Shown here: positions 2,103-63,850 of the stretch, in pieces
Layout of the letters: each line of letters starts with the position of its first letter
Numbering within the stretch: position 1 is the stretch's first letter
Assembly: GCA_037379345.1 (NCBI GenBank)
Contig: CM074516.1
Span: forward strand, 49,513,626-49,577,625
Source: Perna viridis
Taxonomy: Eukaryota
Reading direction: 5' to 3'
Length of the DNA: 64,000 bases
Program-made: the position numbers and the translations under genes
The notes under the pieces: model-generated
The model's database searches: none
What the model saw: the letters and a program-made list of their open reading frames with translations, nothing else
Told to the model about the DNA's origin: nothing

Positions 2103-2108
2103 TATAAA
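2103..2108 (+). promoter_or_regulatory. Possible TATA box
   Basis: TATAAA 65-77 nt upstream of the candidate ATGs; weak evidence in AT-rich DNA. Confidence 0.2.
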
Positions 2109-2179
2109 GTGGAGAGATAAAACGATGATCTTTATTTGAAGTTTTCACCTGATGTGAAGATGATGGAATGTATTATAAT

Positions 2180-2261
2180 ATGGATTTAAATGCATACAGG
2201 ACTATCTTTTATTTTGTCATAGTGAACATTTTATGTTACGTACAATGTAAAAATAGTAGAG
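2180..2261 (+). CDS. Exon 1: signal peptide MDLNAYRTIFYFVIVNILCYVQCKNSR
   Basis: ATG, hydrophobic core, VQC/K cleavage-like site, G|GTAAGG donor in phase 1 matching exon 2. Confidence 0.72.
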
Positions 2262-17200: not shown

Positions 17201-17348
17201 GGCCCCATTCCCCCTTTGATACATTTTGAAGGTATGCACACTTGCCTTCTTATAATTCATTACAAATTATAATTTTTGCACATTGACTAAACAGTGACTT
17301 CAATTCTATTGCTGAAATGAAATAAGATAGGTTCATCATTTTTAGCAA

Positions 17349-17412
<64 letters not shown>

Positions 17413-50400: not shown

Positions 50401-53400
50401 GTTGATTGTCCCAATTCACCATGACCAGTTGATTGTACCAACTCACCATAACCAGTTGATTGTCCCAACTCACAACAACCAGTTGATTGTTCCAACTCAC
50501 CATGACCAGTTGATTGTCCCAACTCACCATGACCAGTTGATTGTCCCAACTCACCATAACAAGTTGATTGTACCAATTATTATATAGATTCTCTCCATAA
50601 TTTGTTGCTGTATTTCACAATTAAAAATGAAAAATTTTGTGATCAATGTATTGATATTATTATTGTGATTCTTTTGGAAGGAGAAAGTTCAAGAGTGAAA
50701 TTACCAAATGTATTCCACTGTGTATTATTGAAAGTTTTTACACCAGGGACATTCGATAAATCATTGCTGCTTTTATAATAAATTGTTTTACAGCTAGTAT
50801 GTACACTGTTTAATTGAACTTTCATAAACAAACAGTATCTTGAATTGAGAATTTTGACAGAAATTAAATTAAAGGGTAAGATATAATAAGATTTATCCTG
50901 AACCAATATCATTTTGAAAAAAAAAAATTAAAAAGGGTACTGTGAATTATCAAGATATTTTTAGAAATGGAACATTTGATAAATCACTGATCTATAAAAA
51001 AATATTTGAATATAAAAATTGATCTCCATTAAGAACTTAATTTACCTGGATGATTTTATCTTATTTAAGCTGATATGAATGGTCACTTCAGTCACAAAAA
51101 AGAAATGTTGGGTCACTATAATGTAAATATTTATTTTAAAATAGGGGTCATTGAGAATTTGTTTATTTACAGGCTGTGTAGATGATCAAGGTGTAGATCA
51201 TATAGAAGGATCTTCATGGAGAACATCTCCTTGTCAAACATGTCAATGTCTGGTAACTATCAAATTTATTGTGTGATTTTACATTTATGAATTCGATTTT
51301 AATTTTGTGAAGTTAAATATAAAAATTGTGGTGAATTAGGATGAAAATAGAACCAGGAATGTTTTCCACAGTAATGAAATCTTCAAGGGTTTTATATTGA
51401 TGGGATAATTAATTTGAAAGAGTGAATAACCAAAGTATTATCACGAGTGTTGAAGAGTGCCTAAATTTAATGAGAGGGTGTGGAACTTGATCCGCGCACT
51501 AATTAAATCCTCAAGTGTTCTTGACAGAAGTGGTCATATTTTGGTTATTCATGATAACCAATTAATTATCCTATTTATTTTATAGATTTTTTTCATAATA
51601 CGGTGTGTATATTGATATTTTCAACATGGATTGGCAGATTGATATCAATGTTGTGACGTTTTGGCGGGAGAAAGTCAGAGAGTGATATTACCAAATTTAT
51701 TTCAGTGTAAATTATCAAAATTTATTTGATAAAACACTGCTATCTATATAATAATACTGCATACTCCATATCTGTCTGTTTCTTACTCAATCTTTTCATT
51801 CCTTCACAATTCTGTAATTGATTTCTCAGGATAAAATGATTCCATATTTTAGTTACCATTTCAGCAGTTTGATTTGTACTGTGTCTCCCTTTTTAGTTTT
51901 CCTGCAAACTCTGTTTAACTTGAAACCAAGATTTTCTTTCCAGTTTTTAATGTATTAAGTGTCAGTCTGTAAGAATCAGGCATAGGGTGAACCATTCATT
52001 GAACTACAATATTTTATAATTCATAATCATGTATTCACTATTACAGAACAGTATGATTACATGTGCAAAGAAAGTATGTGACTCTCCCAGATGTCGATAC
52101 CCTATACAGAGTCCTGGACAATGTTGTCCTACTTGTGAAGGTAAGTATGTGACCCTCCCTGGTGTTGGTAGTACCCTATACAGAGTTCTGGAGAATACTG
52201 TTCTACTTGTGAAGGTAAGTGTGTGACTCTCCCAGATGTAGGTACCCTATACAGAGTCCTGGACAATATTGTCCTACTTGTGAAGGTAAGTGTGTGACCC
52301 TCCCTGGTGTTGGTGGTACCCCAAAGGAGTTCTGGACAATATTGTCCTACTTGTGAAGGTAAGTGTGTGACCCTCCCTGGTGTAGGTGGTACCCCAAAGG
52401 AGTTCTGGACAATGTTGTCCTACTTGTGAAGGTAAGGTTTACTGGTCTTGGATCATTATCAAACTCTTAACCTTCTCATTGGAATACTTGAAAGCAAGTT
52501 ATTATTAAGAAGTTCATATGCTACAATAACACTGATTGTAAAAACTGTTCATGAAATTTTGCATGTAGACTAATTTCTGTAGACTTTTTTTTTAGCAAAA
52601 TGGGTATTGTCCTATTTTCACCTGGTAGGTAAATAGCAACCTAAATACTTCTAATTTACCTCTGTTAAAAGATTTACATTTACTCAAAGTTTTATGCAAG
52701 AAATCTGTACTCTTGATTCATAGATTTAAAAAAAAACATTTTTATTCCTAGGAGGTTGTTTTTATGACGGAAGAATTTACATAACAGGAAGTACATTTGT
52801 ACAAAGGAACGATCGTTGTCAGAAGTGTATGTGTGATCAAGGTGAAGTAACATGCCAGAGAAAGCCATGTCCTGATATTGGCCGATGTAGAACTCCAATA
52901 ACTTTAGAGGGGAAATGTTGTCCTACATGTATGGATTGTGGTAACCGTGCCAATGGAACAAGATGGAGAGATAGTCCATGCCAGCACTGTAGCTGTGTTG
53001 TATGTTTAATTTGGTTTACCATACTTACCTTTGAATAAAAAAGCCACATTAAAATTAATAGTGAAGCGATAAAATGTTTACATGTACAGGTAAAATGATT
53101 CTAATGATAAAATCATATGAGAAATAACAATAGATAAAACTGTTAATACATGTTGAATGTTTTTTACCATATTGAACATTTCTCTTTTGTTTACAGAATG
53201 GACAAGAACAGTGCCATACCATCAGATGTGGTTATCCAGATTGTTCTAATCCTCATATACCACCAGGGGAATGTTGTCCTGTCTGTGAATGTAAGTATCA
53301 TACCACCAGGGGAATGACCATCTGGTGGATGTTGCCCTATAAATGAATGTAATTTACATTGATCATAAAAGATTCTCTAATTTGTGAAAAAGTAATCAAG

Positions 53401-56400
53401 GAAACCAAGATTCTAGCAGAAATCAAAAGAGTGTAATCCACGGACAACAATCAGATGGGGAAAACAGACACACATAACAAAGAACATAAAATAACCAAAA
53501 TAATTTGTACAAAAGAACAAAAGCAAATTAGCAACTTGGACTTCACTGAAAACTGGGAACTGAGTTGCTCATAAAAAGTCAGTTCAGGAGTAGACAAAAG
53601 AGGAAAGGAAAACTATGACACTTTGAATAAATTGGTGCTCATGGTGCAGATGGATACACTGTACTGATCCAAGAATTCATGATAATGACTGTAAAAATTA
53701 TGTACTGATGACTTCAATCTTCTAGCAACATAACCCTGTTTCAGAAGCCTAATTGTGAGAAGTCTAGCAAGGTACAAAAAGTCTGCAATAAGGCAAGCTC
53801 TGGCATAATGTATGAGTTATGATATGAAAACTCGATATGCAGTTGCTGAAGAGGTATTGCCACAGATAATAGGAAAGTTGACATTATGGAATGAAAAGTA
53901 ATTGTGATTGTGGTATAGTTTTGTCAATAGTTTTCCTTTACCATTAATCTCTAATTGTAGGTCAAGAAATGAGGCTGACATCACAGTGCCTCTAGTATCC
54001 TTTATTTCAAGTTCTTTGGGGTAGATCCAATGTATAAAATCCTTTGGATCAGGTCAGCTGTAAAGCCAGCCTCATAAGAGTGAAGGAATAGGTCAGCGAG
54101 TAGAGGAGCACAATTTGTTCCCATTGGAATGTCAATCTTTGGTTCAAATTATGTGTCTACCACACTGGGCAAATATTTTGTCGATCAAATATGTTGTGAA
54201 TCGTAGTTAAATAGCACCAGATTAACAGTTGGATGTAGTTAAATAGCACCAGATTAACGGTTGCATGTTAAAACTATCTGAATTCAGGATGGTCATTTAA
54301 AAATAGGTTCACATCTTTATAGCACTTCTTAATTTTGAATTTGCCATGTCTACACATTTGGTTATTCTTATGAGATTATTGTTCTTGTTTCAGCATGTTT
54401 ATTTGAAGGAAAGGTGATTAAAGATGGAGAGACATATAACCCAGATAAATGTACTACATGTACCTGTAACCATGGAAACATGGACTGTGCCAAGAAAGAT
54501 TGTCCTTCCGTTTCCTGTAGTAATCCAGTCTTTCAGCCAGGAGGATGTTGTCCTGTTTGTGATAGTGGTATTAACTCCAAATTTATTTACACACTGAAGG
54601 GAAACATTTCTAGATTGACATAGTTTAAAAAAACTAAAAAGATACAAGGACAAAAAACAAAAGTGCAAATTACTGTTCTTGACCTCAGATAATGAACAGA
54701 TAATATTTTAATGTCACATCAACTTGAAACTGGGTAAGAATGAATTCAAGATACATCTGTGCACAAAGAATGTAAAAAAACTACTTTATTTTTGTGATGT
54801 CCATGTAGAATATAAATAAATAATATTGTTTTGATAGTCTTGGCAACCTTAATGCTTTCAGAAAGCAACAATTCCATGTTTTTCAGCTTGTGAATATGAC
54901 ATGAAGACATATGTACATGGAGCAACATTTGTTGCCAGTTATGATCCTTGTTTGAACTGTTCCTGTCGGAATGCTATTGTCAGGTGTATTCCCATCCATT
55001 GTTCACTATCTGCTTACCCATGCAGAAATCCAGTTAGAAAGGGAGGCAACTGTTGTGACTTTGAGTGTCCAGGTTTGTGAATGTAGTTAACTTATATAAC
55101 TATCAGTAAATTTATTAGTGTTCAAGGCAAATATAGCTTCTAATTAGTGATAATAAAAAGTCCTTTAACTTGCAAGCTGAGCAATGTATACTGGGAACAA
55201 TATTCCTGAATCTTCATGCAATAACCCTTTATTATTAACCAACTACTCAAAATACGTCAAAAACTGTCCAATTGATATGAATTCAAACCAGGCATCTATG
55301 CGGGGCCAATATGAAAAAAGAGGGCTAATATGGATCAAATATGGATCAAATGCCAATACGGCATCATAACTTCCGGTCGTTTGACACCGCCATTTTTTGT
55401 TAGAATTGGATTTAATGAACTTTGATCACCAGAACTAAAAGCTGCAGAAACACAAAAAAAATCTTCCATTTTATACAAAGTGGATATTTCAGACTGAATA
55501 ATGCAAATAAACCTTTATATTTTTTGGTAAAACATGAAAACAACTGTTCTACAAATCATCTAGTTTAGTTGGTTAATAAAATTATCAATAAATATGTAAT
55601 TTCATATTGGCCCTGTTATAGGTTTCGGTCAATCATATTGGCCTCGACAGCTGTATTGGCCCTCGGGGATGCCTCAGGACCAATACAACTGCCTTGACCA
55701 ATAAGACAGACCTCAAACCTATAACAGGGCATATATGAAATTACTTATTTATTAACATATATTATTAACCAACTTACTACAATATGTATAGAAATGCCCA
55801 TCCTTTATGAACTGAAAATTTCGACAACTGGTCATTACGAACTGGAAATTCCTACAGCCGGTCATCATGAAATCACAGCCATGCATTATGAATTTCAAAA
55901 CAGGGCATCAATACAGGGCCATTAGGAACTAAATCAAAATGGCGTTCATACAAAATAAGTGACAACTTTAATTAAGAGTGACCTAATAATTCAATTAATT
56001 ATTATGAAATAATTTTGAATTGAACAGAAGTCCAAGACAGTAATATAGTATTAATGTATGGCCTTTTCCATATTGGCCCTGTAACATGCCATTGATATTA
56101 ATAATGGCCTCGGATGGCTGTAATGGCCCTCAGCATTGCCGCGGTCCATTACAGTCATCCTTGGCCATTATTAATACCTCGGGCATGTTACAGGGCCAGT
56201 ATGGAAAAGGCTGTACATTAATACTATATTACTGTCTTGGTCTTCTGTTCAATTCAAAATTATTTCAGCATGCCAGCAATCATTATTTCTGTTCCTAAAT
56301 TTGATAGTGAAAAACACAATGTTTATTAATACATCAGACATATTTCAGTAGATTAGTTGCTACATTTTTCATTGAAAGATTGATGAAATATTTTGATTTG

Positions 56401-59400
56401 CAGCATGTGTAGATGGTGGTGTTGAATATCAGGAAGGGGATAAATGGCCATCTACCAGTGATCCCTGTAAAGTTTGTACATGTTCTAGTGGTCTGGTGTC
56501 CTGTAGAAACAAACAGATCTGTCCAACATCTTGTACTCATGGTCTACAGAGGAGGGGGCAGTGTTGTAAGGATTGTACAAGTAAGTCATGTACCCATGGT
56601 CTACAGAGGAGGGGACAGTGTTGTAGGGATTGTACAAGTGAGTCATGTACTCATGGTCTACAGGAGAGCAGGCTGTGTTGTAGGGATTGTACAAGTGAGT
56701 CATGTACTCATGGTCTACAGGAGAGCAGGCTGTGTTGTAGGGATTGTACAAGTGAGTCATGTACTCATGGCCTACAGAAGAGCAGGCTGTGTTGTAGGGA
56801 TTGTACAAGTGAGTCATGTACTCATGGTCTACAGAAGAGCAGGCTGTGTTGTAGGGATGGTACAAGTGAGTCATGTACTCATGGTCTACAGAGGAGGGGG
56901 CAGTGTTGTAGGGATGGTACAAGTGAGTCATGTACTCATGGTCTACAGAAGAGCAGGCTGTGTTGTAGGGATTGTACAAGTTCTAATAAAGTGATTAGCA
57001 TATCCTCTAGGTGTTGAAAATATAATTTACAGAAAATATATTATGATGGTCTTTTAAATTCAGATTGTCTTTACAATGGAAGAGTATACCATGATGGACA
57101 GACCTTTACTCAGCCTGGAGATAGATGTCGCCAGTGTACCTGTAATCGTGGCAACGTAAAATGTGAGAGAACAGGAATATGTCCATTATTGTCATGCCGA
57201 GTGACAGAGACTCAATCAGGGGCATGTTGTCCTATTTGTAAAGGTAAGACTTGTTATTCCATTGACCAATAGGCTGTATAGAAGATACATGACTACAGTT
57301 TATAATATCGTTTCTTACCAGGAATTATGGTTTTAGGGAAATTTCTGTTAAATATTGTTTTAGAGTAATCAAGGGAACCAAGGTTATAGCGGTAATCAAA
57401 AGAATGTAATCCAGGGACAAAGACCAGACATGGAAAACAGACATACACAACAATGAACATAAAGTAACTAAAATCATACATACAAAGTAACAAAAGTAAA
57501 TGAGCAACTCCGACTCCACTAAAAACTGGGAGCATGGACCAGGTGCACTGGTAGGGTAAGCGTCCTCTGCTTTTCTAGAAACACCCGCTGAGTTGCTCAT
57601 AAAAAGTCAAGTCCAGGGTAGACAAACAAGGGAAAGGAAAACTATGACCTGTTGAATAAATCAGTTTTCATGGTGCTGATGGATACACAATAATGATCCA
57701 CAAGTTGGTGAGTATGATAACGGCCATAAAACTTCTGTAGTGATGACTTCAATCTTGTAGCAAAAATAACTCTGTTCCAGAAGCCTATTTGTTAAAGTTC
57801 TAGCGCGATACAAAAAGTCTGCGTAGTTTCAGCAAGCTCTGGCATAACGTATGAGTTATGATGTGAACACGCCATACACAGGAGCATATATTGTGTTTGA
57901 CAAATGATCAGTTATGATTATTAAAGAAGTTTACAAATTAAAGTGAGAAACACATAAAAAAACAGTACACATTTAGAATAATTCAAGTATTATTACCCCA
58001 ATCATATTAATTTTTTACCGGTGAAAGTAGGTCAAGCAGTTTCTCAAAATCATATGTCTGTCTGTCAAGCTTAGAGGGTACCTACTTTGTATGATCTGTA
58101 ACTCAAAAATTAACGGAAACTTTGCACAATGTTTATATATATACTGAAGATGTGCACCACATATTATGGAGAAATTTATGAAATGTTTTCCCTCGTTTTT
58201 AGGATGTTGAATTTGTTGCCAGTTAACTTGCTTATAATTTATGCTTATATACGTTTAAGATATTTGTGTGCTGACAAATATATGAGAGTGGCGCAGGTAT
58301 TGACTTGTATGGATCTTGTTTCTTGTAGGTTGTATTTATGAAGGTAGAAATTATCGCCATGGTGATACAATATCAGCTGACCAGTGTACAAGATGTACTT
58401 GCTTGGAAGGTAAAATTTTACAGGAATATTTCCTTATATATCTTGCTTCAAATAATATTCAGAAGTGATAAATATTTTGTTTTAAAAAATGTGTTACATT
58501 TGTTTATATTTCTGCTTTTAACAAACACATCTAATAATTTTGAAAGGAATTTTATTATCATGAATTAATGAAGTTCTCTAAATTGATATAATTTAGTTAA
58601 ATTGTACATTTTCAGGCCAAGTAAACTGTCAGAGACCTCAGTGCTCACCACCTCGTTGTAAGCACCCTACAGTCCAGCCTGGAGACTGTTGCCCAACATG
58701 TGCTGAATGCATATTTGGGGGACGAACATATCAAAATCTAGAACAGTTCACCCCTCCCAACAGGCCTTGTGTGTCTTGTCTGTGTAAGGTAGGTTAGAGA
58801 GATCCATCCCTTCCAACAGGCCTTGTGTGTCTTGTCTGTGTAATATAGGTAGGAGAGATCCAGGCCTATTATGTTATGCTTGTTTGTCCCCATGGTTTTA
58901 GCTGAAGGGGACTTTAGATTTGCACTCCATCGGTCTGTCTGTCAGTCAGGAAAAAATTTGAAGTTTTCCACCTTTTTTTTTTATAAGACTTGCAGATATT
59001 AAACTGATTTTTTTTATGTGAGTCAACCTTGATGAGTTACAGATCAACTTTAGGTTTCGTTTCCACTTTGCTGATTTTTGTCAAAGTTATGGCCCTTGAA
59101 TTTTCTGAAATTTTATATGCGTCTATCATTATGAGTTACAGATCAATTTTACGTTTGGTCTCCTCCGCTAATTTTTGTCAGAGTTATGGCCCTTGAACTT
59201 TGAAAAATTTACCGAAATTTAAGTTTTCTTCACTTTATTTCTAAACTTTTGTAGAGATTGAGCTGATTTGTGGTATGTGAGTCTACCCTTATGAGTTACA
59301 GATCAAGTTTCAGTTTCGTTCTGCTTTGCTGATTTTTGTCTGAGTTATGGCCCTTGAATTAACCAAATTTTAAAATTTTTCCGCACTTTTTTTCTAAACG

Positions 59401-62400
59401 CTTGCAGATGTTGAGCTGATTTATGGTATGTGAGTCTACCTTGATGAGTTACAGATCAAGTTTACATTTCATTCTGTATTGCTGATTTTTCCAAAGTTTC
59501 AAATCAAGGTGATTTCTTCAGTTTGTCATTTATACTTGATGATCAAAGGTAGTATTTGGGTCAATGATATAAACAGCAGGTAGGGTACTGTGTATTGTTT
59601 TGCAATACTCTCAGAGGGCTTGTTATACCATCAATCAAATACAATATACACTTTTACTTGTTCTTAGAATGTAAGTAATTGTTACTTTGTTAATGTAAAT
59701 TGCATTCTTTAACTCACATTTTGTTTTATTAACTTAAATTGTGTTTTAGTGTTAACTAATAAATTAAATTATGTTTTGTTAACTTAAATTGCGAATTTAT
59801 AGGTACAATTTGTATGATTTATAATTTTTTTCTCTAGTTCTTTCATTACTTTTAGAGAGGACATTTGACATGTGAGCAAAAGAACAAGAACACTTGTTCC
59901 CCTACTTCCTGTAAACATCCTGACACACCTCCCGGTCAGTGTTGTCCTACATGTGATGGATGTTTCTTCATGAGAAGAATGTTCAGAAACAATCAGAAAT
60001 TTGTACCTCCTGGTGGAGATATGTGTAAAATCTGCCTGTGTCAGGTAAGCTGTTCAAATTGTCTGTTATAATCTGTTTGTGTCAGGTAAGCTGTTATAAT
60101 CTGCCTATATCAGGTAAGCTGTTAGAATCTACTTGTGTCAATTCAGCTGTTATAATCTGCTTGTGTCAGACAAGCTGTCAGAATCTGGCTTTGTCAGTTT
60201 GTCAGGTAAGCTGTTCAAATAGTCTGTTAGAATCTGTTTATGTCAGGTAAGCTGTTATAATCTACTTGTGTCAGGTAAGCTGTTATAACTGCTTGTGACA
60301 GGTAAGCTGTTATAATCTGCTTGTGTCAGGTAAGCTGTTATAAATGCTTGTGTCAGGTAAGCTGTTAGAATCTTCCTGTGTCAGGTAAGCTGATATAACT
60401 GCTTGTGTCAGGTAAGCTGTTTAAATTGTCTGTTAGAATCTGCCTGTGTCAGGCAAGCTGTTAGAATCTGCTTGTGTCAGTTCAGGTGCTATAACTGCTT
60501 GTATCAGGTAAGCTGTTAGAATCTGGCTTTGTCAGGTGAGCTGTTCAAATTGTCTGTCAGAATCTGCTTGTGTCAGTTCAGCTGTTATAATCTGCTTATG
60601 TCTGGTAAGCTGCTTAAACTGTCCATTATAATCTGCTTGTGTCAGTTTAGCTGTTATAATCTGCTTATGTCAGGTAAGCTGTTATAATCTGCTTGTATCA
60701 GTTCAACTGTTATAACTGCTTGTGTCAGGTAAGCTGTTAGAATATGCTTCTGTTAATTCAGCTGTTATAATCTGCTTGTGTCAGGCAAGCTGTTAGAATC
60801 TGGGTTTGTCAGGTTAGCTGTTCAAATTGTCTGTTAGAATCTGCTTGTGTCAGTTCAGCTGTTATAATCTGCTTGTGTCAGGTTAGCTGTTATAACTGCT
60901 TATGTCAGGTAAGCTGATATAACTGCTTGTGTCAGGTAAACTGTTAGAATCAGCCTGTGTCGGGTAAGCTGATAGAGTTTCACTGTTCTAATCAGCTTGT
61001 TACAGGTAAGATGTTTTAATCTGCATGTGTCTGTTCAGCTGTTATAATCTGCTTGTGTCAGTTCAGGTGCTATAACTGCTTGTATCAGGTAAGCTGTTAG
61101 AATCTGGCTTTGTCAGGTGAGCTGTTCAAATTGTCTGTCAGAATCTGCTTGTGTCAGTTCAGCTGTTTTAATCTGCTTATGTCTGGTAAGCTGCTTAAAC
61201 TGTCCGTTATAATCTGCTTGTGTCAGTTTAGCTGTTATAATCTGCTTATGTCAGGTAAGCTGTTATAATCTGCTTGTATCAGTTCAACTGTTATAACTGC
61301 TTGTGTCAGGTAAGCTGTTAGAATCTGCTTCTGTTAATTCAGCTGTTGTAATCTGCTTGTGTCAGGCAAGCTGTTAGAATCTGGGTTTGTCAGGTTAGCT
61401 GTTCAAATTGTCTGTTAGAATCTGCTTGTGTCAGGTTAGCTGTTCAAATTGTCTGTTAGAATTTGCTTGTGTCAGTTCAGCTGTTATAATCTGCTTGTGT
61501 CAGGTTAGCTGTTATAACTGCTTATGTCAGGTAAGCTGATATAACTGCTTGTGTCTGTTCAGCTGTTATAATCTGCTTGTATCAGGCAAGCTGTTAGAAT
61601 CTGGCTTTGTCAGGTTAGCTGTTCAAATTGTCTGTTAGAATCTGCTTGTGTCAGGTTAGCTGTTATAACTGCTTATGTCAGGTACGCTGTTAGAATCTGC
61701 ATGTGTCAGGTAAGCTGATATAACTGCTTGTGTCAGGTAAACTGTTAGCATCAGCCTGTGTCAGGTAAGCTGATAGAGTTTCACTGTTCTAATCAGCTTG
61801 TTACAGGTAAGATGTTTTTTTAATTCATGTGTCTGTTCAGCTGTTATAATCTGCTTGTGTCAGTTCAGCTGTTACAACTGCTTGTGTCAGGTTAGCTGTT
61901 ACAACTGATTGTGTCAGGTAAGCTGTTAGAATCTGCCTGTGTCAGGTAAGCTGATATAACTGCTTGTGTCAGGTAAGCTGTTATAATCTGCTTGTGTCAG
62001 TTCAGCTGTTACAACTGCTTGTGTCAGGTTAGCTGTTACAACTGCTTGTGTCAGGTAAGCTGTTAGAATCTGCCTGTGTCAGGTAAGCTGTTATAATCTG
62101 CTTGTGTCATGTAAGCTGTTATAGTTTCATTGTTCTAATCAGCTTGTTACAGGTAAGATGTTATAATCTGCTTCTGTCTGTTCAGCTGTTACAACTGCTT
62201 GTGTCAGGTTAGCTGTTGTAACTGCTTCTGTCAGGTAAGCTGTTAGAATCTGCCTGTGTCAGGTAAGCTGTCAGTATCTGCCTGTGTCAGGTAAGCTGAT
62301 ATAACTGCTTGTGTCAGGTAAGCTGTTTTAATCTGCTTGTGTCAGGTAAGCTGTTAGAGTTCCACTGTTCTAATCAGCTTGTTAAAGGTAAGATGTTATA

Positions 62401-63850
62401 ATCTGCTTGTGTCTGTTCAGCTGTTACAATCTGCTTGTGTCAGGTAAGCTGTTACAACTGCTTGTGTCAGGTTAGCTTTATAACTGCTTGTGTCAGGTAA
62501 GCTGTTAGAATCTGCCTGTGTCAGGTAAACTGATATAACTGCTTGTGTCAGGTAAGCTGTTAGAGTTTCACTGTTCTAATCAGCTTGTTTCATGTAAGAT
62601 GTTATAATCTGCTTGTGTCTGTTCAGCTGTTACAACTGCTTGTGTCAGGTTATCTGTTATAACTGCTTGTGTCAGGTAAGCTGTTAGAATCTGCCTGTGT
62701 CAGGTAAGCTGATATAACTGCTTGTGTCAGGTAAGCTGTCAGAATCTGCCTGTGTCTGGTAAGCTGTTACAACTGCTTGTGTCAGGTAAGCTGTTAGAAT
62801 CTGCCTGTGTCTGGTAAGCTGATATAACTGCTTGTGTCAGGTAAGCTGTCAGAATCTGCCTGTGTCTGGTAAGCTGTTACAACTGCTTGTGTCAGGTAAG
62901 CTGTTAGAATCTGCCTGTGTCTGGTAAGCTGATATAACTGCTTGTGTCAGGTAAGCTGTTATAATCTGCTTGTGTCAGGTAAGCTATTAGAGTTCCAATG
63001 TTCTAATCAGCTTGTTAAAGGTAAGATGTTATAATCTGCTTGTGTCTGTTCAGCTGTTATAATTTGCTTGTGTCAGTTCAGCTGTTATATTCTGATTATG
63101 GCAGACAAGCTGTTGTAAACTGCTTACTTCAGGTAGACTGTTAGAATATGCTTGTTGCAATTAAGCTGTTGTAAACTACTTGTGTCAGGTAAGCTGTAAA
63201 AATGTGCTTCTGTCAAGTAACCTGTTTTATACTGCTTGTGGCAGGTAATCTGTCTTAATCTGCATGTGTCAAGTAAGCTGTTGTAAATGCTTATGTCAGT
63301 CAAGCTGTTATAATCTACTTGTGTTAGGTAAGGTTTTTAAATCTGTTTATATCAAGTTTCCTGCTGGAAGACATAAAAAAATAATTTATCAGGTGAGTAT
63401 TAATCTTACAAAACTTGCCAGAAAAATCCAATGTAACAAAATTCTATTGGGCTGAAATTCTGAAACATTAGTTAATATATCTTAACTTAACTTTGTTTCT
63501 TTGAATGTCACAATGAAGTTAGGAAGCAAAAGAAAATAAAATACTATTGAAAATCTGTGGTTAAATCAATGGGTATATGACTTGTGCAAGTAAAAGTAAA
63601 CTCTGAATTTTAATATTTATGTTACACAAATTTGCAGTTCTCTAATTTATTACAACAAAATATATTTCAGAATGGAACAGTAGACTGTAAAGACATGGGT
63701 TGTCCTCCTTTGAATTGTATCAACCCTGTTAAACCACCAGGACAGTGTTGTGGGACTTGTCCAATGGCCTGTACTGTTCATGGCAAGTCCTATGCTGAAG
63801 GTCAAACATTTGATGATCCCAAGGACAAATGTTCTGTCTGCATGTGTACC
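2180..63850 (+). CDS. Multi-exon gene (32 exons in window, 3'-incomplete): secreted kielin/chordin-like protein with two EGF-Kunitz-tyrosinase-like-GYD-repeat cassettes
   Basis: All introns GT-AG with matching phases; exon lengths sum to 7611 nt with no stop; domains continue across junctions (e.g. FT|GCGGNANNF, CTCQ|RGRAEC). Confidence 0.88.
4782..5030. repeat. Minisatellite, about 62 bp x 4
   Basis: Unit like agaggaatctattgaggcagaggtttatgttttctg...tgtgaggcttct. Confidence 0.85.
5335..5670. mobile_element. Non-autonomous palindromic element; inverted copy at about 51400-51742, fragment at about 50680-50775
   Basis: ctttctcccgccaaaac and gaataaccaaaatatga...aattaattatcctat occur in reverse complement at 51.4-51.7 kb. 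Confidence 0.7.
6040..6208. repeat. Minisatellite, about 29 bp x 6
   Basis: Unit like ttttggctctctagtgtttatagggcatgc. Confidence 0.85.
10421..10927. mobile_element. MITE with imperfect terminal inverted repeats (possibly Kolobok-type)
   Basis: agtaggtccagtaagg (10428) versus ccttatcagacctact (10905-10920), with TTAA-like flanks. Confidence 0.55.
11566..12071. repeat. Minisatellite, 39 bp x about 13
   Basis: ttccatcaccacccctgtatacccaatataagtttactattt, near-identical units. Confidence 0.95.
15874..15998. repeat. Direct duplication, about 70 bp period
   Basis: tctataattaaatacagggggtggatccagggtttcagg occurs twice. Confidence 0.8.
17353..17410. repeat. (GA)n microsatellite
   Basis: About 29 GA units. 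Confidence 0.98.
19905..20485 (+). mobile_element. Helentron/HINE-like non-autonomous element with degenerate internal repeats
   Basis: Shares gatattgaactgatt...gatgagttac...gagttatgcccct motifs with 58880-59625. Confidence 0.5.
20643..21139 (+). CDS. Exon 2: TSPN/laminin-G-like N-terminal domain
   Basis: tttacag acceptor; open frame EYNVLSNVRRY...KGYQF...HCNRTHVSINNNC...QKFQ; CAG|GTAATA donor. Confidence 0.82.
21545..21830. repeat. Minisatellite, about 59 bp x 5
   Basis: aatctgctccacatactgtgaaacctacctcaacagaaccccattctactgacgtc units. Confidence 0.9.
23085..24165 (-). mobile_element. Penelope-like retroelement 3' remnant with a 38-bp tandemised end, split by a nested insertion
   Basis: Minus frame EGYSAMRFMSSLQK...HHKLLD...MRTNLF and ARAC motif; same terminus (agagtaatcaagggaacca) as the other copies. 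Confidence 0.75.
23600..24098 (+). mobile_element. SINE-like insertion with 11-bp target-site duplication
   Basis: GC-richer island ending gctgaaatattgc...taaaccccaacaatcaatcaa; flanked by cttcctgaagt and cttccagaagt. Confidence 0.7.
24473..24539 (+). CDS. Exon 3: end of TSPN-like domain (GEVRQSKVY...VCPES)
   Basis: ttttgcag acceptor, G|GTAAGT donor; completes KFQ|G motif; phase 0/1. Confidence 0.8.
25835..26015. repeat. Minisatellite, 28 bp x about 6
   Basis: attcctttgatttcctaggctgaaagag units. Confidence 0.9.
26138..27170. repeat. Minisatellite, 36 bp (some 34 bp) x about 29
   Basis: gatttctttgatgtcagtatgtggcaatgactgtat units. Confidence 0.96.
28133..29357. repeat. Minisatellite, 44 bp x about 28
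   Basis: ggtctggtgtagaaatagaagacatgtctgcagatggtcgctt units. Confidence 0.96.
29741..29872. repeat. Tandem repeat, about 42 bp x 3
   Basis: aatactgatctgtctaaagcttgtgtgatatcagcaaaa units. Confidence 0.9.
32649..32800 (+). CDS. Exon 4: linker and coiled coil (...QVTQLKLVVDSLTTE)
   Basis: ttttcag acceptor, GAG|GTATTG donor; phase 1/0; heptad-like pattern continues into exon 5. Confidence 0.75.
33578..33712 (+). CDS. Exon 5: coiled-coil end and N-half of a VWC domain
   Basis: NTGLKTKIRQYEETCVC...CTIGNKIYDEGQTWSEGRCVVCTCQ; tacag and CAG|GTATGT sites. Confidence 0.9.
33821..33960. repeat. Long inverted repeat (about 64-bp arms)
   Basis: aagaattggc...gtgcatatt pairs with aatatgcac...gccaattctt. 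Confidence 0.85.
34335..34383 (+). CDS. Exon 6: truncated VWC end (RGRAECRTRSDSPSCK)
   Basis: ttttcag acceptor, T|GTAAGT donor; phase 0/1. Confidence 0.82.
34362..34521 (+). repeat. Exon 6 donor-spanning tandem repeat, 32 bp x 5
   Basis: tctgattcacctagctgtaaat|gtaagtta unit. Confidence 0.9.
34827..35045 (+). CDS. Exon 7: EGF domain 1 and N-part of Kunitz domain 1
   Basis: PCSSNPCKNRGYC...YKCICITPWDGPNC; CVLPPDPGTC...RYYYD...C.PFNFT. Confidence 0.93.
35285..35600 (+). mobile_element. 3' end remnant of a CR1/L2-type LINE
   Basis: LFRHTFVYS..SLCNTLPNEIRSA...FRHRLKIFL resembles the ORF2 C-terminal WN.LP..IR...FK..LK motif. Confidence 0.55.
35625..35960. repeat. Minisatellite, 42 bp x about 8
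   Basis: catagtattgtggttgtactgcattcactttgccaaagt units. Confidence 0.92.
36065..36195 (+). CDS. Exon 8: Kunitz 1 C-part and start of GACC module
   Basis: GCGGNANNFESHSAC...KGACCF...ERRCQ; CAG|GTAGGT donor. Confidence 0.92.
36158..37895 (+). repeat. Exon 8 donor-spanning tandem repeat, about 56 bp x about 31, with a higher-order period near 560 bp
   Basis: ctaccactggtcctcagcaggaagagagaagatgtcag|gtaggttaggttacagat; identical ORFs at 36640 and 37200. Confidence 0.95.
38583..38784 (+). mobile_element. Penelope-like element 3' terminal fragment next to the exon 9 acceptor
   Basis: Reverse complement of about 57362-57565; near-identical pseudo-ORFs MLPVFSGV...YRYN. Confidence 0.85.
38793..39013 (+). 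CDS. Exon 9: GACC module end and half-VWC
   Basis: VYSLGECKG...PGQICAEAGC...GCNYGDRVYQPGE...CQQRCTC; phase 0/2. Confidence 0.88.
39518..40404 (+). CDS. Exon 10: tyrosinase-fold domain 1 and start of GYD repeats
   Basis: IRREIRDM, HGSAFFLPWHRYYL, LPYFDF, FGGDG, HQYIGGDM, YDPVFIAIHAFIDKLYWDWQ. Confidence 0.95.
40696..40881 (+). CDS. Exon 11: G-[YF]-[DN]-x-x repeats
   Basis: GYNRDGYNLQGFNKEGFDRYGYDVKG...; phase 1/1; not in the + strand ORF track. Confidence 0.92.
41255..41494 (+). CDS. Exon 12: GYD repeat end and helical linker
   Basis: GFTREGYDQYGF...CNYLFNGP...RLCPQL; A|GTAAGT donor. Confidence 0.9.
41579..41654 (-). mobile_element. Short Penelope-like terminal fragment
   Basis: agagtaatcaagggaaccaaggttatagc...ccagggacaaaga, matching 57362. 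Confidence 0.8.
41871..42113 (+). CDS. Exon 13: Cys-rich module
   Basis: CTVNPCQSAVCQAYPEAVCRIDLCRECRAVWYRDGKKVNC; phase 1/1. Confidence 0.88.
42008..42570 (+). repeat. Exon 13 donor-spanning tandem repeat, 118 bp x about 4.5
   Basis: Donor copies at 42114, 42232 and 42350; sequence decays distally. Confidence 0.9.
42823..42981 (+). CDS. Exon 14: EGF domain 2 and start of Kunitz 2
   Basis: DFCQPSPCLNGGIC...CRCPPGYDGPRC...VCTLSVSH. Confidence 0.93.
43291..43498 (+). CDS. Exon 15: Kunitz 2, GACC motif, start of GYD insert
   Basis: GTCTQRLSRWYYN...CEEFIFTGCNGNSNNF...CQSRCMEGACCY...GYDEKGYDR. Confidence 0.93.
43540..44290. repeat. Minisatellite, about 22 bp x about 34
   Basis: ctccactgtttctgggttatat units. 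Confidence 0.9.
44745..44854 (+). CDS. Exon 16: GYD-repeat region
   Basis: YGFTLGGVN...YNRNGFDRQ; phase 2/1. Confidence 0.85.
46724..46889 (+). CDS. Exon 17: GYD repeats
   Basis: GFDRDGYNRHGQDRQGYDRAGFDTSGYD...GFNR; phase 1/2. Confidence 0.9.
47147..48961 (+). CDS. Exon 18: GACC module end, half-VWC, tyrosinase-fold domain 2 (about 47451-48174), long GYD repeat, linker
   Basis: Inside the 635-aa ORF; KRKEIRE, AFLPWHRYFL, IPYYDW, HSWVGGHM, DPVFLSHIAFIDKIWDSWQ. Confidence 0.95.
49135..49229 (+). CDS. Exon 19: Cys-rich module 2, N-part
   Basis: LCFITYYFSKCPLGRYPVTCAENICQRRQCP; phase 2/1. Confidence 0.9.
49240..49670. repeat. Degenerate minisatellite, about 48 bp
   Basis: gtcattacactgagtggtgaatgttacagtctctaagtcttcctaaagcat units. 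Confidence 0.8.
49839..49931 (+). CDS. Exon 20: Cys-rich module 2, C-part
   Basis: GIPDAVCRINTCGSCSLEWYNVQTGNTVQCS; homologous to exon 13. Confidence 0.9.
50090..50575. repeat. Minisatellite, 33 bp x about 15
   Basis: actcaccatgaccagttgattgtcccca-type units. Confidence 0.93.
51173..51252 (+). CDS. Exon 21: VWC
   Basis: GCVDDQGVDHIEGSSWRTSPCQTCQCL. Confidence 0.9.
52047..52140 (+). CDS. Exon 22: VWC C-half
   Basis: NSMITCAKKVCDSPRC...GQCCPTCE. Confidence 0.9.
52072..52437 (+). repeat. Exon 22 donor-spanning tandem repeat, about 73 bp x 5
   Basis: acttgtgaag|gtaag with GT at 52141, 52215, 52286, 52359 and 52432. Confidence 0.92.
52752..52999 (+). CDS. Exon 23: VWC plus half-VWC
   Basis: GCFYDGRIY...CQKCMC...GKCCPTC..C...W..SPCQHCSCV. 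Confidence 0.92.
53197..53290 (+). CDS. Exon 24: VWC C-half
   Basis: NGQEQCHTIRC...PPGECCPVCE. Confidence 0.9.
53391..54205 (-). mobile_element. Penelope-like retroelement RT remnant, internally deleted
   Basis: Minus-strand PMGTNCAPLLADLFLHSYE, IYPKELEIKDT, SASFLDL, VNFP and LIHYARAC. Confidence 0.88.
54394..54567 (+). CDS. Exon 25: VWC
   Basis: CLFEGKVIKDGE...CTTCTC...GGCCPVCDS; donor could be 3 nt earlier. Confidence 0.88.
54887..55072 (+). CDS. Exon 26: VWC
   Basis: CEYDMKTYVHG...DPCLNCSC...GNCCDFECP. Confidence 0.9.
55567..55773. repeat. Palindromic non-autonomous element (hairpin)
   Basis: gtaatttcatattggccctgttataggttt pairs with aaacctataacagggcatatatgaaattac. Confidence 0.75.
56005..56267. 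repeat. Long inverted repeat (about 90-bp arms)
   Basis: tgaaataattttgaattgaacagaag...ccctgtaacatgcc pairs with ggcatgttacaggg...cttctgttcaattcaaaattatttca. Confidence 0.88.
56404..56580 (+). CDS. Exon 27: VWC
   Basis: CVDGGVEYQEGDKW...DPCKVCTC...GQCCKDCT; A|GTAAGT donor. Confidence 0.9.
56532..56980 (+). repeat. Exon 27 donor-spanning tandem repeat, 57 bp x 8, in frame
   Basis: tgtactcatggtctacag...gattgtacaa|gtgagtca; ORF 56496-57017 reads through. Confidence 0.95.
57064..57243 (+). CDS. Exon 28: VWC
   Basis: CLYNGRVYHDGQTF...CRQCTC...GACCPICK. Confidence 0.92.
57362..57885 (-). mobile_element. Penelope-like retroelement 3' remnant
   Basis: Minus-strand PVYGVFTS*LIRYARAC*NYADFLYRAR...RLKSSLQKFYGR followed by the conserved terminus. 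Confidence 0.88.
58329..58409 (+). CDS. Exon 29: VWC N-half
   Basis: GCIYEGRNYRHGD...CTRCTCLE. Confidence 0.9.
58616..58788 (+). CDS. Exon 30: VWC halves
   Basis: GQVNC...GDCCPTCAECIFGGRTY...PCVSCLCK. Confidence 0.92.
58880..59625 (+). mobile_element. Helentron/HINE-like element with internal tandem units
   Basis: 5' gtctgtctgtc microsatellite; about four gatgagttacagatcaa...gttatggcccttgaa units; short 3' hairpin gtattg...caatac. Confidence 0.6.
59856..60044 (+). CDS. Exon 31: VWC halves
   Basis: RGHLTC...GQCCPTCDGCFF...CKICLCQ; CAG|GTAAGC donor. Confidence 0.92.
60029..63335 (+). repeat. Exon 31 donor-spanning satellite, about 29 bp x roughly 100, with higher-order blocks
   Basis: aatctgcttgtgtcag|gtaagctgttat; the first unit is the real exon end; a block recurs about 580 bp apart (60481 and 61062). 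Confidence 0.95.
63671..63850 (+). CDS. Exon 32: VWC halves; gene continues beyond window
   Basis: NGTVDC...GQCCGTC..CTVHGKSYAEGQTF...CSVCMCT|GTAAGT. Confidence 0.92.

What the first reader, a model, noticed from the sequence alone, without database searches (positions are those of the whole stretch)
2180..63850. Giant secreted chimera: kielin/chordin-like scaffold carrying two EGF-Kunitz-tyrosinase-GYD cassettes
Seen: 32 phase-consistent exons give >2500 aa ordered SP, TSPN-like, coiled coil, half-VWC, [EGF, Kunitz, GACC, half-VWC, tyrosinase fold, GYD repeats, Cys module] x2, then at least 11 VWC. Established: TSPN plus a long VWC array is the kielin layout (BMP/TGF-beta binding), and molluscan tyrosinases are usually single-domain tanning or shell enzymes. 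I know of no characterised protein that combines these. Inference: a multifunctional extracellular-matrix protein linking growth-factor or collagen binding with a phenoloxidase-derived fold and Tyr-rich repeats.
Basis: partly seen in the sequence, partly recalled or inferred. Interest (0 to 1): 0.9.

Follow-up and report, generated by a model that had tools for sequence, protein, structure and literature searches.

The report
Giant kielin-like gene with dead tyrosinases
The window holds the first 32 exons of one very large bivalve gene, the mussel copy of an ancient animal kielin/chordin-like protein whose long form carries two tyrosinase-like modules that have lost their copper sites; the gene is real and in databases, but this part of the family seems never to have been studied.

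Summary
I rebuilt a 32-exon model on the + strand: all AG/GT, phase-consistent, no stops, 2,537 aa, from 2180 to 63850. Pfam confirms EGF, Kunitz, two tyrosinase domains and about 11 VWC domains. The gene runs about 31 kb past the window and ends in VWD-C8-TIL.

It is not a mussel oddity. The model aligns in a single HSP with scallop and freshwater-mussel proteins. Orthologues of 3,000-4,900 aa with tyrosinase, VWC and VWD occur in molluscs, a brachiopod, spiders, horseshoe crab, echinoderms, tunicates, sharks, sturgeon, coelacanth and salamander, mostly auto-named kielin/chordin-like protein.

All 38 embedded tyrosinase domains examined lack copper ligands: mussel T1 keeps 4 of 6, T2 keeps 2 of 6, and CuB His1 is never present. 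They look like conserved pseudo-enzymes. The two cassettes were duplicated before protostomes and deuterostomes split.

Function is inferred: an oligomeric BMP/TGF-beta-binding scaffold with two non-catalytic modules. The only paper I found mentions these proteins in passing. The scan had already noted the donor-echo repeats on other DNA of this genome.

The parts
2180..2261 (+). Exon 1: start codon and signal-peptide-like hydrophobic segment (an in-frame ATG also at 2168)
   Evidence: The donor is GTAAGG and the phase fits exon 2. Residues 11-27 align with the Sinanodonta orthologue. No RNA junction was checked.
20643..21139 (+). Exon 2: N-terminal beta-rich domain (TSPN-like by position)
   Evidence: tblastn to Argonauta q56-126. 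hhalign to the N-terminus of 13 orthologues: 98.7%, E 3e-16. Related mytilid fragments are 69-78% identical and diverge right after the donor. Fold not verified.
24473..24539 (+). Exon 3: end of the N-terminal domain
   Evidence: The only candidate with the right phases and strong splice sites. The motif G-x-V-x-x-S-K-V-Y...C-P matches Argonauta. It has a counterpart in scallop.
32649..32800 (+). Exon 4: linker and first half of the heptad (coiled-coil-like) segment
   Evidence: Aligns with the orthologues' segment before the C-x-C motif. Heptad spacing was read from the sequence.
33578..33712 (+). Exon 5: end of the heptad segment, C-x-C, N-half of the first VWC
   Evidence: tblastn to Lingula, Argonauta, shark and hemichordate. 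VWC profile 1-26.
34335..34383 (+). Exon 6: short Cys-rich end of the first VWC; followed by a donor-echo array
   Evidence: Matches Argonauta q307-322. GTAAGT donor. Four echo copies follow.
34827..35045 (+). Exon 7: EGF 1 and first part of Kunitz 1
   Evidence: Pfam EGF and Kunitz. 56% identical to scallop.
36065..36195 (+). Exon 8: end of Kunitz 1 and the G-A-C-C motif; followed by a 25-copy donor-echo array
   Evidence: Pfam Kunitz positions 29-50. Echo array at 36158-37885.
38793..39013 (+). Exon 9: Cys-rich segment with a VWC N-half just before tyrosinase 1
   Evidence: tblastn to Lingula q453-525. No Pfam call. 41% identical to scallop.
39518..40404 (+). Exon 10: tyrosinase-like domain T1 (4 of 6 copper histidines) and the start of GYD repeats
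   Evidence: PF00264 E 9e-28. PDB hemocyanin and tyrosinase alignments. Ligand table Y H H V H H.
40696..40881 (+). Exon 11: G-[YF]-[DN]-x-x repeats of cassette 1
   Evidence: Motif count. tblastn to orthologues. No Pfam family.
41255..41494 (+). Exon 12: last GYD units and the conserved post-repeat domain of cassette 1
   Evidence: tblastn to Lingula q911-991. Acceptor chosen from sequence and phase.
41871..42113 (+). Exon 13: end of the post-repeat domain and the 8-Cys module of cassette 1; a donor-echo array follows
   Evidence: tblastn. No Pfam family. Echo array at 42010-42552.
42823..42981 (+). Exon 14: EGF 2
   Evidence: PF00008 E 2e-8.
43291..43498 (+). Exon 15: Kunitz 2 (six Cys, Thr at the P1 position), the G-A-C-C motif, first GYD units
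   Evidence: PF00014 E 1e-16. Sequence.
44745..44854 (+). Exon 16: GYD-type repeats before T2
   Evidence: tblastn to Lingula q1201-1238. Phases consistent.
46724..46889 (+). Exon 17: GYD repeats before T2
   Evidence: tblastn. Motif count.
47147..48961 (+). Exon 18 (1,815 nt): GYD units, VWC N-half, tyrosinase-like domain T2 (2 of 6 histidines), about 20 GYD units, post-repeat domain
   Evidence: PF00264 E 9e-27. RNA depth and the donor junction. AF2 core pLDDT 80-94 and Foldseek TM 0.75 to tyrosinases. Ligands Y V H S H I.
49135..49229 (+). Exon 19: first half of the 8-Cys module of cassette 2
   Evidence: Both junctions seen in stranded RNA reads and in three runs' contigs.
49839..49931 (+). 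Exon 20: second half of the 8-Cys module of cassette 2
   Evidence: Both junctions seen in RNA. tblastn.
51173..51252 (+). Exon 21: N-half of the first VWC of the long array
   Evidence: Both junctions seen in RNA. Too short to appear in the ORF list.
52047..52140 (+). Exon 22: C-half of that VWC; followed by a 4-copy donor-echo array
   Evidence: RNA uses the first donor. VWC profile 26-57. Echo copies.
52752..52999 (+). Exon 23: one whole VWC and the N-half of the next
   Evidence: The acceptor junction is in RNA, and the loose end at 52999 continues with the first letters of exon 24. VWC E 2e-11.
53197..53290 (+). Exon 24: VWC C-half
   Evidence: VWC profile 25-57. Matches the RNA loose-end letters.
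54394..54567 (+). Exon 25: VWC
   Evidence: VWC E 2e-13.
54887..55072 (+). Exon 26: VWC
   Evidence: VWC E 2e-6. Acceptor.
56404..56580 (+). Exon 27: VWC; followed by an in-frame 57-nt donor-echo array (56532-56981)
   Evidence: VWC E 2e-8. The first donor, GTAAGT, was chosen. Scallop has no extra residues here. Donor use was not checked in RNA.
57064..57243 (+). Exon 28: VWC
   Evidence: VWC E 5e-11.
58329..58409 (+). Exon 29: VWC N-half
   Evidence: Model and phases. 59% identical to scallop.
58616..58788 (+). Exon 30: VWC C-half and the next N-half
   Evidence: VWC E 7e-7.
59856..60044 (+). Exon 31: VWC C-half and the next N-half; followed by a 3.3-kb, 81-copy donor-echo array
   Evidence: tblastn. 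Echo array at 60063-63332.
63671..63850 (+). Exon 32: VWC C-half and the next N-half; the gene continues beyond the window
   Evidence: tblastn to Lingula q2669-2729. The downstream exons reach a stop near window coordinate 95,369.

Best explanation
The window holds exons 1-32 (2,537 codons) of a single gene of about 93 kb. It encodes a secreted protein of roughly 3,900 aa. This is the bivalve orthologue of the long form of kielin/chordin-like protein (KCP/Kielin), which is conserved across Bilateria.

Layout, in order:
- signal peptide
- N-terminal beta-rich (TSPN-like) domain
- heptad coiled-coil segment ending in C-x-C
- one VWC
- two copies of a cassette: EGF, Kunitz, G-A-C-C motif, (GYD repeats), VWC N-half, tyrosinase-like domain, G-[YF]-[DN]-x-x repeats, an unnamed domain of about 100 aa, an 8-Cys module
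- about 25 VWC
- VWD-C8-TIL

Shown here: the gene structure, the single transcript across the cassette/VWC boundary, orthology, the duplication of the cassette before the protostome-deuterostome split, and the loss of copper ligands.

Inferred: the protein works as an oligomeric extracellular scaffold. Its VWC array binds BMP/TGF-beta-family ligands, as established for vertebrate KCP, Xenopus Kielin and Crossveinless-2/BMPER. The two cassettes are non-catalytic binding or anchoring modules. They keep the type-3 copper fold but cannot hold the binuclear copper centre. The Asp- and Tyr-rich pentapeptide repeats may bind calcium or matrix.
For: One gene:
- 32 phase-consistent AG/GT exons with no stop.
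- GT..AG junctions 48961>49135, 49229>49839, 49931>51173, 51252>52047 and 52140>52752. They appear in stranded raw RNA reads and in contigs of three other runs from three studies.
- One 12,522-nt contig covers all of these. It extends 3,844 nt upstream of exon 18, against 3,752 nt of modelled CDS, and 6.25 kb downstream.

Orthology:
- Colinear tblastn to Lingula and Argonauta.
- A single HSP over model residues 27-2536 to scallop (50% identity) and 11-2536 to Sinanodonta. There are only four small indels, none at an exon junction.
- VWD, C8 and TIL lie downstream.
- Giant tyrosinase+VWC+VWD orthologues occur in about 35 species of 7 phyla.

Pseudo-enzyme:
- Ligand table: T1 keeps 4 of 6 and T2 keeps 2 of 6.
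- CuB His1 is absent in all 38 KCP-type domains. Seven reference tyrosinases and one choanoflagellate relative keep 6 of 6.
- The fold is kept: PF00264, Foldseek TM 0.75.
- The cassette exons are at least as conserved as the VWC exons (50-61% against 41-59% identity to scallop).

Ancient duplication: the T1 and T2 clades (99/97 and 98/96 support) each hold protostomes and deuterostomes.
Against: - No binding or activity was tested. The BMP role is carried over from vertebrate KCP/Kielin/BMPER, which I know from memory rather than from a paper read here.
- Orthology to the characterised mouse and Xenopus genes rests on database names and layout. I did not build a tree that includes them.
- RNA junctions were checked only for exons 18-23.
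- The TSPN fold is not verified.
- T1 keeps four ligands and has two extra histidines nearby (I-H-H), so a remodelled metal site cannot be excluded.
- The GYD region of the model has only moderate confidence (pLDDT about 58-80), and calcium binding is a guess from composition.
Confidence: 0.75

Rival explanations
1. The protein is an active phenoloxidase built into a matrix protein. The tyrosinase domains would convert the neighbouring Tyr-rich GYD repeats, or partner proteins, to DOPA/quinone and cross-link the protein. That would make it a self-tanning shell, byssus or cement component.
For: - Tyr-rich repeats lie directly beside each tyrosinase fold.
- T1 keeps 4 of 6 ligands plus two spare histidines one helical turn away.
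- Mussels rely on DOPA chemistry, and small VWC proteins named kielin/chordin-like turn up in adhesive and eggcase proteomes.
Against: - CuB His1 is missing in all 38 domains, and T2 keeps only 2 of 6.
- The same architecture is kept in sharks, coelacanth, salamander, spiders and starfish, which make no byssus or shell.
- The proteome hits in the papers are small VWC-only proteins, not this one.
Confidence: 0.1
2. The locus holds two or three neighbouring genes: an N-terminal TSPN gene, one or two tyrosinase-cassette genes, and a kielin-like VWC gene. They only look continuous because exon phases happen to fit.
For: - Intron 1 is 18 kb, and no RNA junction was checked upstream of exon 18.
- Several database orthologues are shorter fragments, for example Ptychodera at 1,515 aa and teleost pieces of 534-1,218 aa.
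Against: - Spliced RNA links cassette 2 to the VWC array, and a VWC domain is split across that boundary.
- The 12.5-kb contig has just the length upstream that the 17 upstream exons need.
- EGF 2 starts 710 bp after the cassette 1 Cys module, at an acceptor and with no start codon or signal peptide.
- Scallop and Sinanodonta proteins are colinear from residue 11-27 onward in one HSP.
Confidence: 0.03
3. The cassettes are mainly calcium- or mineral-binding modules. The G-[YF]-[DN]-x-x arrays would act like D-x-D-G calcium loops, so the protein would be a calcium-dependent matrix organiser rather than chiefly a BMP modulator.
For: - There are 52 Asp/Asn-rich pentapeptide motifs in three blocks.
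- Specific Gly, Asp, Tyr and Arg positions in the repeats are invariant across 13 orthologues from molluscs to vertebrates.
- The region is modelled without regular secondary structure but with moderate confidence.
Against: - There is no match to any calcium-binding family. Pfam finds nothing even at E up to 10.
- Similar repeats occur in anaerobic Firmicutes proteins of unknown role.
- This reading does not exclude the best explanation.
Confidence: 0.12

Closest known systems
Vertebrate kielin/chordin-like protein (KCP, CRIM2) and Xenopus Kielin
   Same: Both are secreted, carry a long tandem VWC (chordin-type CR) array and end in VWD-C8-TIL. Kielin also has an N-terminal TSPN-type domain. 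Database orthologues of the mussel gene in sharks, sturgeon, coelacanth and salamander carry this name.
   Different: As I recall them, the characterised mouse and Xenopus proteins have no tyrosinase, Kunitz, EGF or GYD parts. The mussel protein and the long forms carry one or two such cassettes between the first VWC and the array. BMP binding was not tested here.
Crossveinless-2 / BMPER
   Same: VWC repeats followed by VWD and TIL. BMP binding through a VWC is the best-documented mechanism for this layout (established knowledge).
   Different: BMPER has only five VWC, no N-terminal TSPN or coiled coil, and no cassettes.
Type-3 copper proteins: molluscan tyrosinases and hemocyanin functional units
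   Same: The central domain is the same (PF00264 E about 1e-27; best PDB sequence hits are molluscan hemocyanins at E 1e-70; Foldseek TM 0.75 to bacterial tyrosinases).
   Different: Two (T1) or four (T2) of the six copper histidines are replaced. The domains are embedded in a 3,900-aa multidomain protein.
Copper-free relatives of type-3 copper proteins (arthropod hexamerins and pseudo-hemocyanins)
   Same: They are a precedent for the fold being kept for a non-catalytic role after the copper ligands are lost (established knowledge).
   Different: They belong to a different branch of the superfamily, are free storage proteins and are not matrix modules.
Choanoflagellate multidomain Kunitz-tyrosinase proteins (Salpingoeca urceolata 2,386 aa; S. 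rosetta 'mantle protein 9')
   Same: They are the nearest relatives of the KCP-type domain in the tree (99/99 support). Kunitz lies upstream of tyrosinase in the same protein.
   Different: S. urceolata keeps all six histidines. Pfam finds no VWC array or VWD in it; it has TIG domains instead.
Thrombospondin-1/2 N-terminal region
   Same: The order is the same: N-terminal globular domain, heptad oligomerisation segment ending in cysteines, then a VWC (sequence; thrombospondin layout from established knowledge).
   Different: No TSR, type-3 repeats or thrombospondin C-terminal domain. The resemblance is one of layout only.

Membership tests
Kielin/chordin-like protein (KCP/Kielin), long form | Long tandem array of VWC (chordin-type cysteine-rich) domains | tested here: met
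   Pfam VWC on 10 exon translations in the window, plus 7 in one downstream exon and more beyond. About 11 fall inside the window.
Kielin/chordin-like protein (KCP/Kielin), long form | C-terminal VWD followed by C8 and TIL | tested here: met
   Outside the window, at window coordinates of about 87.7-95.4 kb: VWD (E 2e-11 and 2e-9), C8 (E 3e-22), TIL (E 1e-8).
Kielin/chordin-like protein (KCP/Kielin), long form | Signal peptide and N-terminal TSPN-type domain | tested here: inconclusive
   Exon 1 reads as a signal peptide. Exon 2 is homologous to the orthologues' N-terminal domain (hhalign 98.7%). There is no Pfam or PDB hit and the AF2 model has pLDDT 38. Laminin_G_3 is found only in the crinoid orthologue, below its cut-off.
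Kielin/chordin-like protein (KCP/Kielin), long form | Colinear orthology with proteins annotated as KCP | tested here: met
   Colinear tblastn to Lingula and Argonauta. Single-HSP alignment to scallop and Sinanodonta. The names come from NCBI and UniProt pipelines. No tree including mouse KCP was built.
Kielin/chordin-like protein (KCP/Kielin), long form | Binds BMP/TGF-beta ligands and modulates signalling | not testable with these tools
   Needs binding and signalling assays.
Tyrosinase / type-3 copper protein | Central four-helix-bundle domain (PF00264) | tested here: met
   E 9e-28 and 9e-27. AF2 core pLDDT 80-94 and Foldseek TM 0.73-0.77 to tyrosinases.
Tyrosinase / type-3 copper protein | Six histidine ligands (CuA x3, CuB x3) | tested here: not met
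   T1 reads Y H H V H H and T2 reads Y V H S H I at the six columns where seven reference tyrosinases all have His.
Tyrosinase / type-3 copper protein | Monophenolase or diphenolase activity | not testable with these tools
   Needs an enzyme assay.
Kunitz/BPTI inhibitor | PF00014 match with six cysteines | tested here: met
   Kunitz 2: E 1e-16 with six Cys. Kunitz 1: split over exons 7 and 8 (E 7e-8 and 4e-6). By my by-eye alignment to BPTI, the last Cys is replaced by Ala and two Cys follow in G-A-C-C.
Kunitz/BPTI inhibitor | Basic P1 residue for trypsin-type inhibition | tested here: not met
   The residue after the second Cys is Asn (Kunitz 1) and Thr (Kunitz 2). The P1 position was assigned by eye against BPTI recalled from memory.
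Decapeptide repeat region (PF25296) | Profile match | tested here: not met
   No Pfam hit for the three GYD stretches even at E up to 10. Bacterial look-alikes found with the same stretch do carry PF25296.

The most novel reading that the evidence does not exclude
The ancestral bilaterian KCP/Kielin was not a plain VWC array. It already carried two Kunitz-pseudo-tyrosinase-GYD cassettes. These derive from a module that is still copper-competent in choanoflagellates, and they serve as a conserved ligand-binding or matrix-docking device that tunes BMP/TGF-beta signalling. If so, the characterised mouse and Xenopus proteins are reduced forms, and a whole functional half of the family has gone unstudied.
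Probability: 0.35. Interest if true: 0.7.

Novelty: new member of a known kind. Interest (0 to 1): 0.5.

Why it matters
- KCP/Kielin is known as a modulator of BMP and TGF-beta signalling, and its function has been studied on forms that lack these cassettes.
- In most bilaterian lineages the orthologue is twice as long. It carries one or two highly conserved tyrosinase-derived modules that have been copper-dead since before protostomes and deuterostomes split.
- That makes a clear, testable question: what does a 550-million-year-old pseudo-tyrosinase do inside a growth-factor-binding scaffold?
- For tyrosinase surveys in molluscs, these domains should not be counted as enzymes.
- For genome annotation, the locus gives an RNA-supported example of a 93-kb, 12.5-kb-mRNA gene whose introns are full of donor-echo repeats that can mislead gene finders.

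Tried and rejected
- My first two automatic exon chains added spurious micro-exons inside intronic minisatellites and chose wrong acceptors. I replaced them with a chain constrained by RNA junctions, orthologue cover and a split-codon check, followed by hand refinement.
- A search for the missing exon 3 with a W-x-C motif found nothing. Relaxing the motif found it.
- Pfam finds nothing for the GYD repeats, the post-repeat domain, the 8-Cys module or exon 2.
- PDB sequence search with exon 2 found nothing.
- AF2 of exon 2 with three close mytilid fragments gave pLDDT 38, so I ran no fold search on it.
- MAFFT of the short exon against giant orthologues scattered it along their length and was discarded.
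- The protein Atlas was busy on both tries.
- Rfam and tRNA scans of the window were empty.
- Literature searches pairing kielin with tyrosinase, Kunitz, hemocyanin, mollusc and thrombospondin found no characterisation. There was only a passing remark in PMC11667028, plus small VWC-only 'kielin/chordin-like' proteins in adhesive and eggcase proteomes.
- The joined 32-exon protein was never sent to a search tool. Exons were searched one by one by reference. The joined model was built only inside scripts from the window file, for the phase check and for local alignment to proteins that the tools had returned.
- Complex prediction was not used, because the report does not rest on any claimed pairwise binding.

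Full report
**1. What is in the window**

The window is AT-rich animal DNA (28-46% GC) with no N. It lies at G000:C6:49513626-49577625. Another agent's note calls the genome a mussel. I did not check that, but the closest named relatives of the protein are bivalves.

Stop-free stretches on the + strand carry obvious cysteine-rich and tyrosinase-like translations. Pfam scans of single exon translations, each given by reference, found the following:
- EGF at 34703-35050 and 42756-42998.
- Kunitz at 34703-35050 plus 36019-36201, and at 43254-43508.
- Tyrosinase PF00264 at 39456-40472 and 47052-48968 (E about 1e-27 each).
- VWC on ten exon translations between 33548 and 58794.

**2. Gene model**

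Two first automatic chains were poor. I then combined four things: RNA junctions, tblastn cover by orthologues, a check on split codons, and inspection of the sequence.

The result is 32 exons from 2180 to 63850. All have AG/GT sites, the phase is continuous, there is no stop, and the product is 2,537 aa.

The joined protein was not sent to any search tool. It was built only inside scripts. There it aligns in one HSP with two independently predicted proteins:
- scallop: model 27-2536 against 30-2532, 50% identity;
- Sinanodonta: model 11-2536 against 14-2541, 47% identity.

Against scallop there are four indels of 4-11 residues, none at an exon junction. Every exon has a counterpart.

**3. One transcript**

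Fourteen probable RNA runs from five studies hold 85-98% of the words of exon 18. I laid one stranded raw-read RNA run and the contigs of three runs on 47150-53100. This shows GT..AG junctions joining the following exons:
- exon 18 to 19 (48961>49135)
- exon 19 to 20 (49229>49839)
- exon 20 to 21 (49931>51173)
- exon 21 to 22 (51252>52047)
- exon 22 to 23 (52140>52752)

A loose end at 52999 continues with the first letters of exon 24.

The raw reads lie on one strand only. Exon 21 (80 nt) had been missed by the ORF list, and it completes a VWC that is split across the supposed gene boundary.

One contig of 12,522 nt covers all of this. It has 3,844 nt upstream of exon 18, against 3,752 nt of modelled coding sequence upstream. 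That leaves about 90 nt of leader. It also has 6.25 kb downstream of 52999.

A contig is not a molecule.

**4. The rest of the gene**

I fetched 70 kb downstream and 20 kb upstream from the window's own assembly. The orthologues continue to align colinearly up to window coordinate of about 95,360. Pfam finds there:
- seven VWC in one 1.3-kb exon, and further VWC;
- VWD;
- C8;
- TIL.

The reading frame stops right after the last aligned residues. Nothing aligns upstream of the window. The gene therefore spans about 93 kb and encodes roughly 3,900 aa.

**5. It is a member of a widespread family**

A full-library search with exon 18 found giant proteins. Their names and domains are given.

A second search used the Argonauta protein, restricted to its cassette 2, and looked among proteins of 2,000-6,600 aa. 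It lists tyrosinase+VWC+VWD proteins in the following groups:
- six bivalves, five gastropods, two cephalopods
- Lingula
- three tunicates
- two spiders and Limulus
- two starfish (a crinoid came)
- sharks, rays and a chimaera
- sturgeon, coelacanth, a salamander and a teleost

Most are auto-named kielin/chordin-like protein.

The only paper I found that touches this is PMC11667028. It remarks that some very long spiralian tyrosinase sequences contain kielin/chordin-like domains. The other 'kielin/chordin-like' proteins in adhesive and eggcase proteomes are small VWC-only proteins.

**6. The tyrosinase domains are copper-dead**

HMMER alignments to molluscan hemocyanin units and a MAFFT alignment of 49 domains fix the six ligand columns.
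- Seven reference tyrosinases, one unnamed Logan-derived protein and the Salpingoeca urceolata protein have His at all six.
- Mussel T1 has Y H H V H H (4 of 6).
- Mussel T2 has Y V H S H I (2 of 6).
- None of the 38 KCP-type domains from 24 species has more than four.
- CuB His1 is never His in these domains.

My first table used a wrong column for CuA His1, which I corrected.

The fold is intact. AF2 of exon 18 gives pLDDT 80-94 in the core, and Foldseek gives TM 0.73-0.77 to bacterial tyrosinases.

The cassette exons are as conserved to scallop as the VWC exons (50-61% against 41-59%). So the modules are under constraint although they are not oxidases of the canonical kind.

**7. Age of the cassettes**

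I built a maximum-likelihood tree of the 49 domains (rooted at the midpoint for drawing only). The rows are those listed; other hits were left out. It gives:
- a KCP-type clade (100/98 support);
- a split into T1 (99/97) and T2 (98/96), each holding both protostomes and deuterostomes;
- vertebrates and Limulus with only T2;
- echinoderms and the partial amphioxus model with only T1;
- choanoflagellate multidomain proteins as the nearest outside group (99/99).

One of those choanoflagellate proteins has Kunitz upstream of a six-histidine tyrosinase.

**8. The other parts**

*GYD arrays.* The 52 motifs fall into three blocks, at model residues 804-891, 1151-1272 and 1610-1752.
- They have no Pfam family.
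- Particular positions are invariant from molluscs to vertebrates.
- They are modelled without regular secondary structure at pLDDT of about 58-80.
- Look-alike repeats in anaerobic Firmicutes proteins carry PF25296. I take this as similarity of repeat type, not shown homology.

*Kunitz domains.* Kunitz 1 and Kunitz 2 have Asn and Thr where BPTI has its P1 lysine. Kunitz 1 lacks the last canonical cysteine. Both points come from a by-eye alignment to BPTI recalled from memory.

*N-terminal domain.* Exon 2 is homologous to the N-terminal domain of the 13-species alignment (hhalign 98.7%). Its TSPN fold is not verified.

*Heptad segment.* The segment before C-x-C has the 3-4 spacing of a coiled coil in the mussel and in the consensus. 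This is read from the sequence, not computed.

**9. How it most likely works**

Shown:
- one secreted multidomain protein;
- orthology to the long KCP family;
- two ancient cassettes;
- loss of the copper site.

Inferred from established knowledge of KCP, Kielin, BMPER and thrombospondin:
- oligomerisation through the N-terminal heptad and cysteines;
- binding of BMP/TGF-beta ligands by the VWC array;
- the cassettes acting as non-catalytic binding or docking modules, perhaps calcium-dependent.

I put about 0.95 on the gene structure, 0.9 on orthology, 0.8 on the pseudo-enzyme reading and about 0.5 on the BMP-scaffold function.

**10. Verdict**

It is a new member of a known, database-annotated kind whose cassette half appears unstudied, so interest is moderate.

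Noticed in passing
window 34361-34520, 36158-37885, 42010-42552, 52098-52436, 56532-56981, 60063-63332: Six of the 32 exons (6, 8, 13, 22, 27, 31) are followed by tandem copies of their own last bases plus the 5' splice site. The copy counts are 4, 25, about 4, 4, 6 and 81. For exon 22 all four runs use the first donor. The array after exon 27 is in frame (57 nt), but scallop has no extra residues there. The scan has already noted such donor-echo arrays elsewhere in this genome.
   Followed up: partly
window 51329-51925: This intronic stretch has very high contig depth (up to about 340 summed) and reads on both strands. Many loose ends lead into other sequence, as expected of a dispersed repeat or transposon that is expressed elsewhere.
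   Followed up: no
window 11566-12071, 26139-27171, 28132-29356, 35626-35960, 43556-44207, 49347-49669, 50090-50576: Further intronic minisatellites with periods of 22-51 nt and up to 30 copies. They do not contain a splice site of this gene, but they give long false ORFs in several frames.
   Followed up: no
window 2100-2180: A TATAAA lies at about 2103. Short upstream ORFs and an in-frame ATG at 2168 sit four codons before the ATG at 2180. The true start codon and transcription start are open.
   Followed up: no
proteins P0024, P0021, P0036, P0032 (choanoflagellates and an unnamed contig): Multidomain choanoflagellate proteins of 1,900-2,800 aa group next to the KCP-type tyrosinase domains. 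P0024 has TIG, Kunitz and a tyrosinase with all six histidines.
   Followed up: partly
proteins P0020, P0200-P0214 (metagenomes; Syntrophomonadaceae, Pelotomaculum): Bacterial proteins of about 1,500-2,500 aa carry long G-F-[DN]-x-x-G-F-D arrays (Pfam PF25296 'Decapeptide') that score up to 340 bits against the animal GYD region. Whether this is homology or convergence of a simple repeat is open.
   Followed up: no
window 48358 and 52861: A>G differences from the window occur in all four runs at full depth. They are most simply allelic or strain differences inside exons 18 and 23.
   Followed up: no
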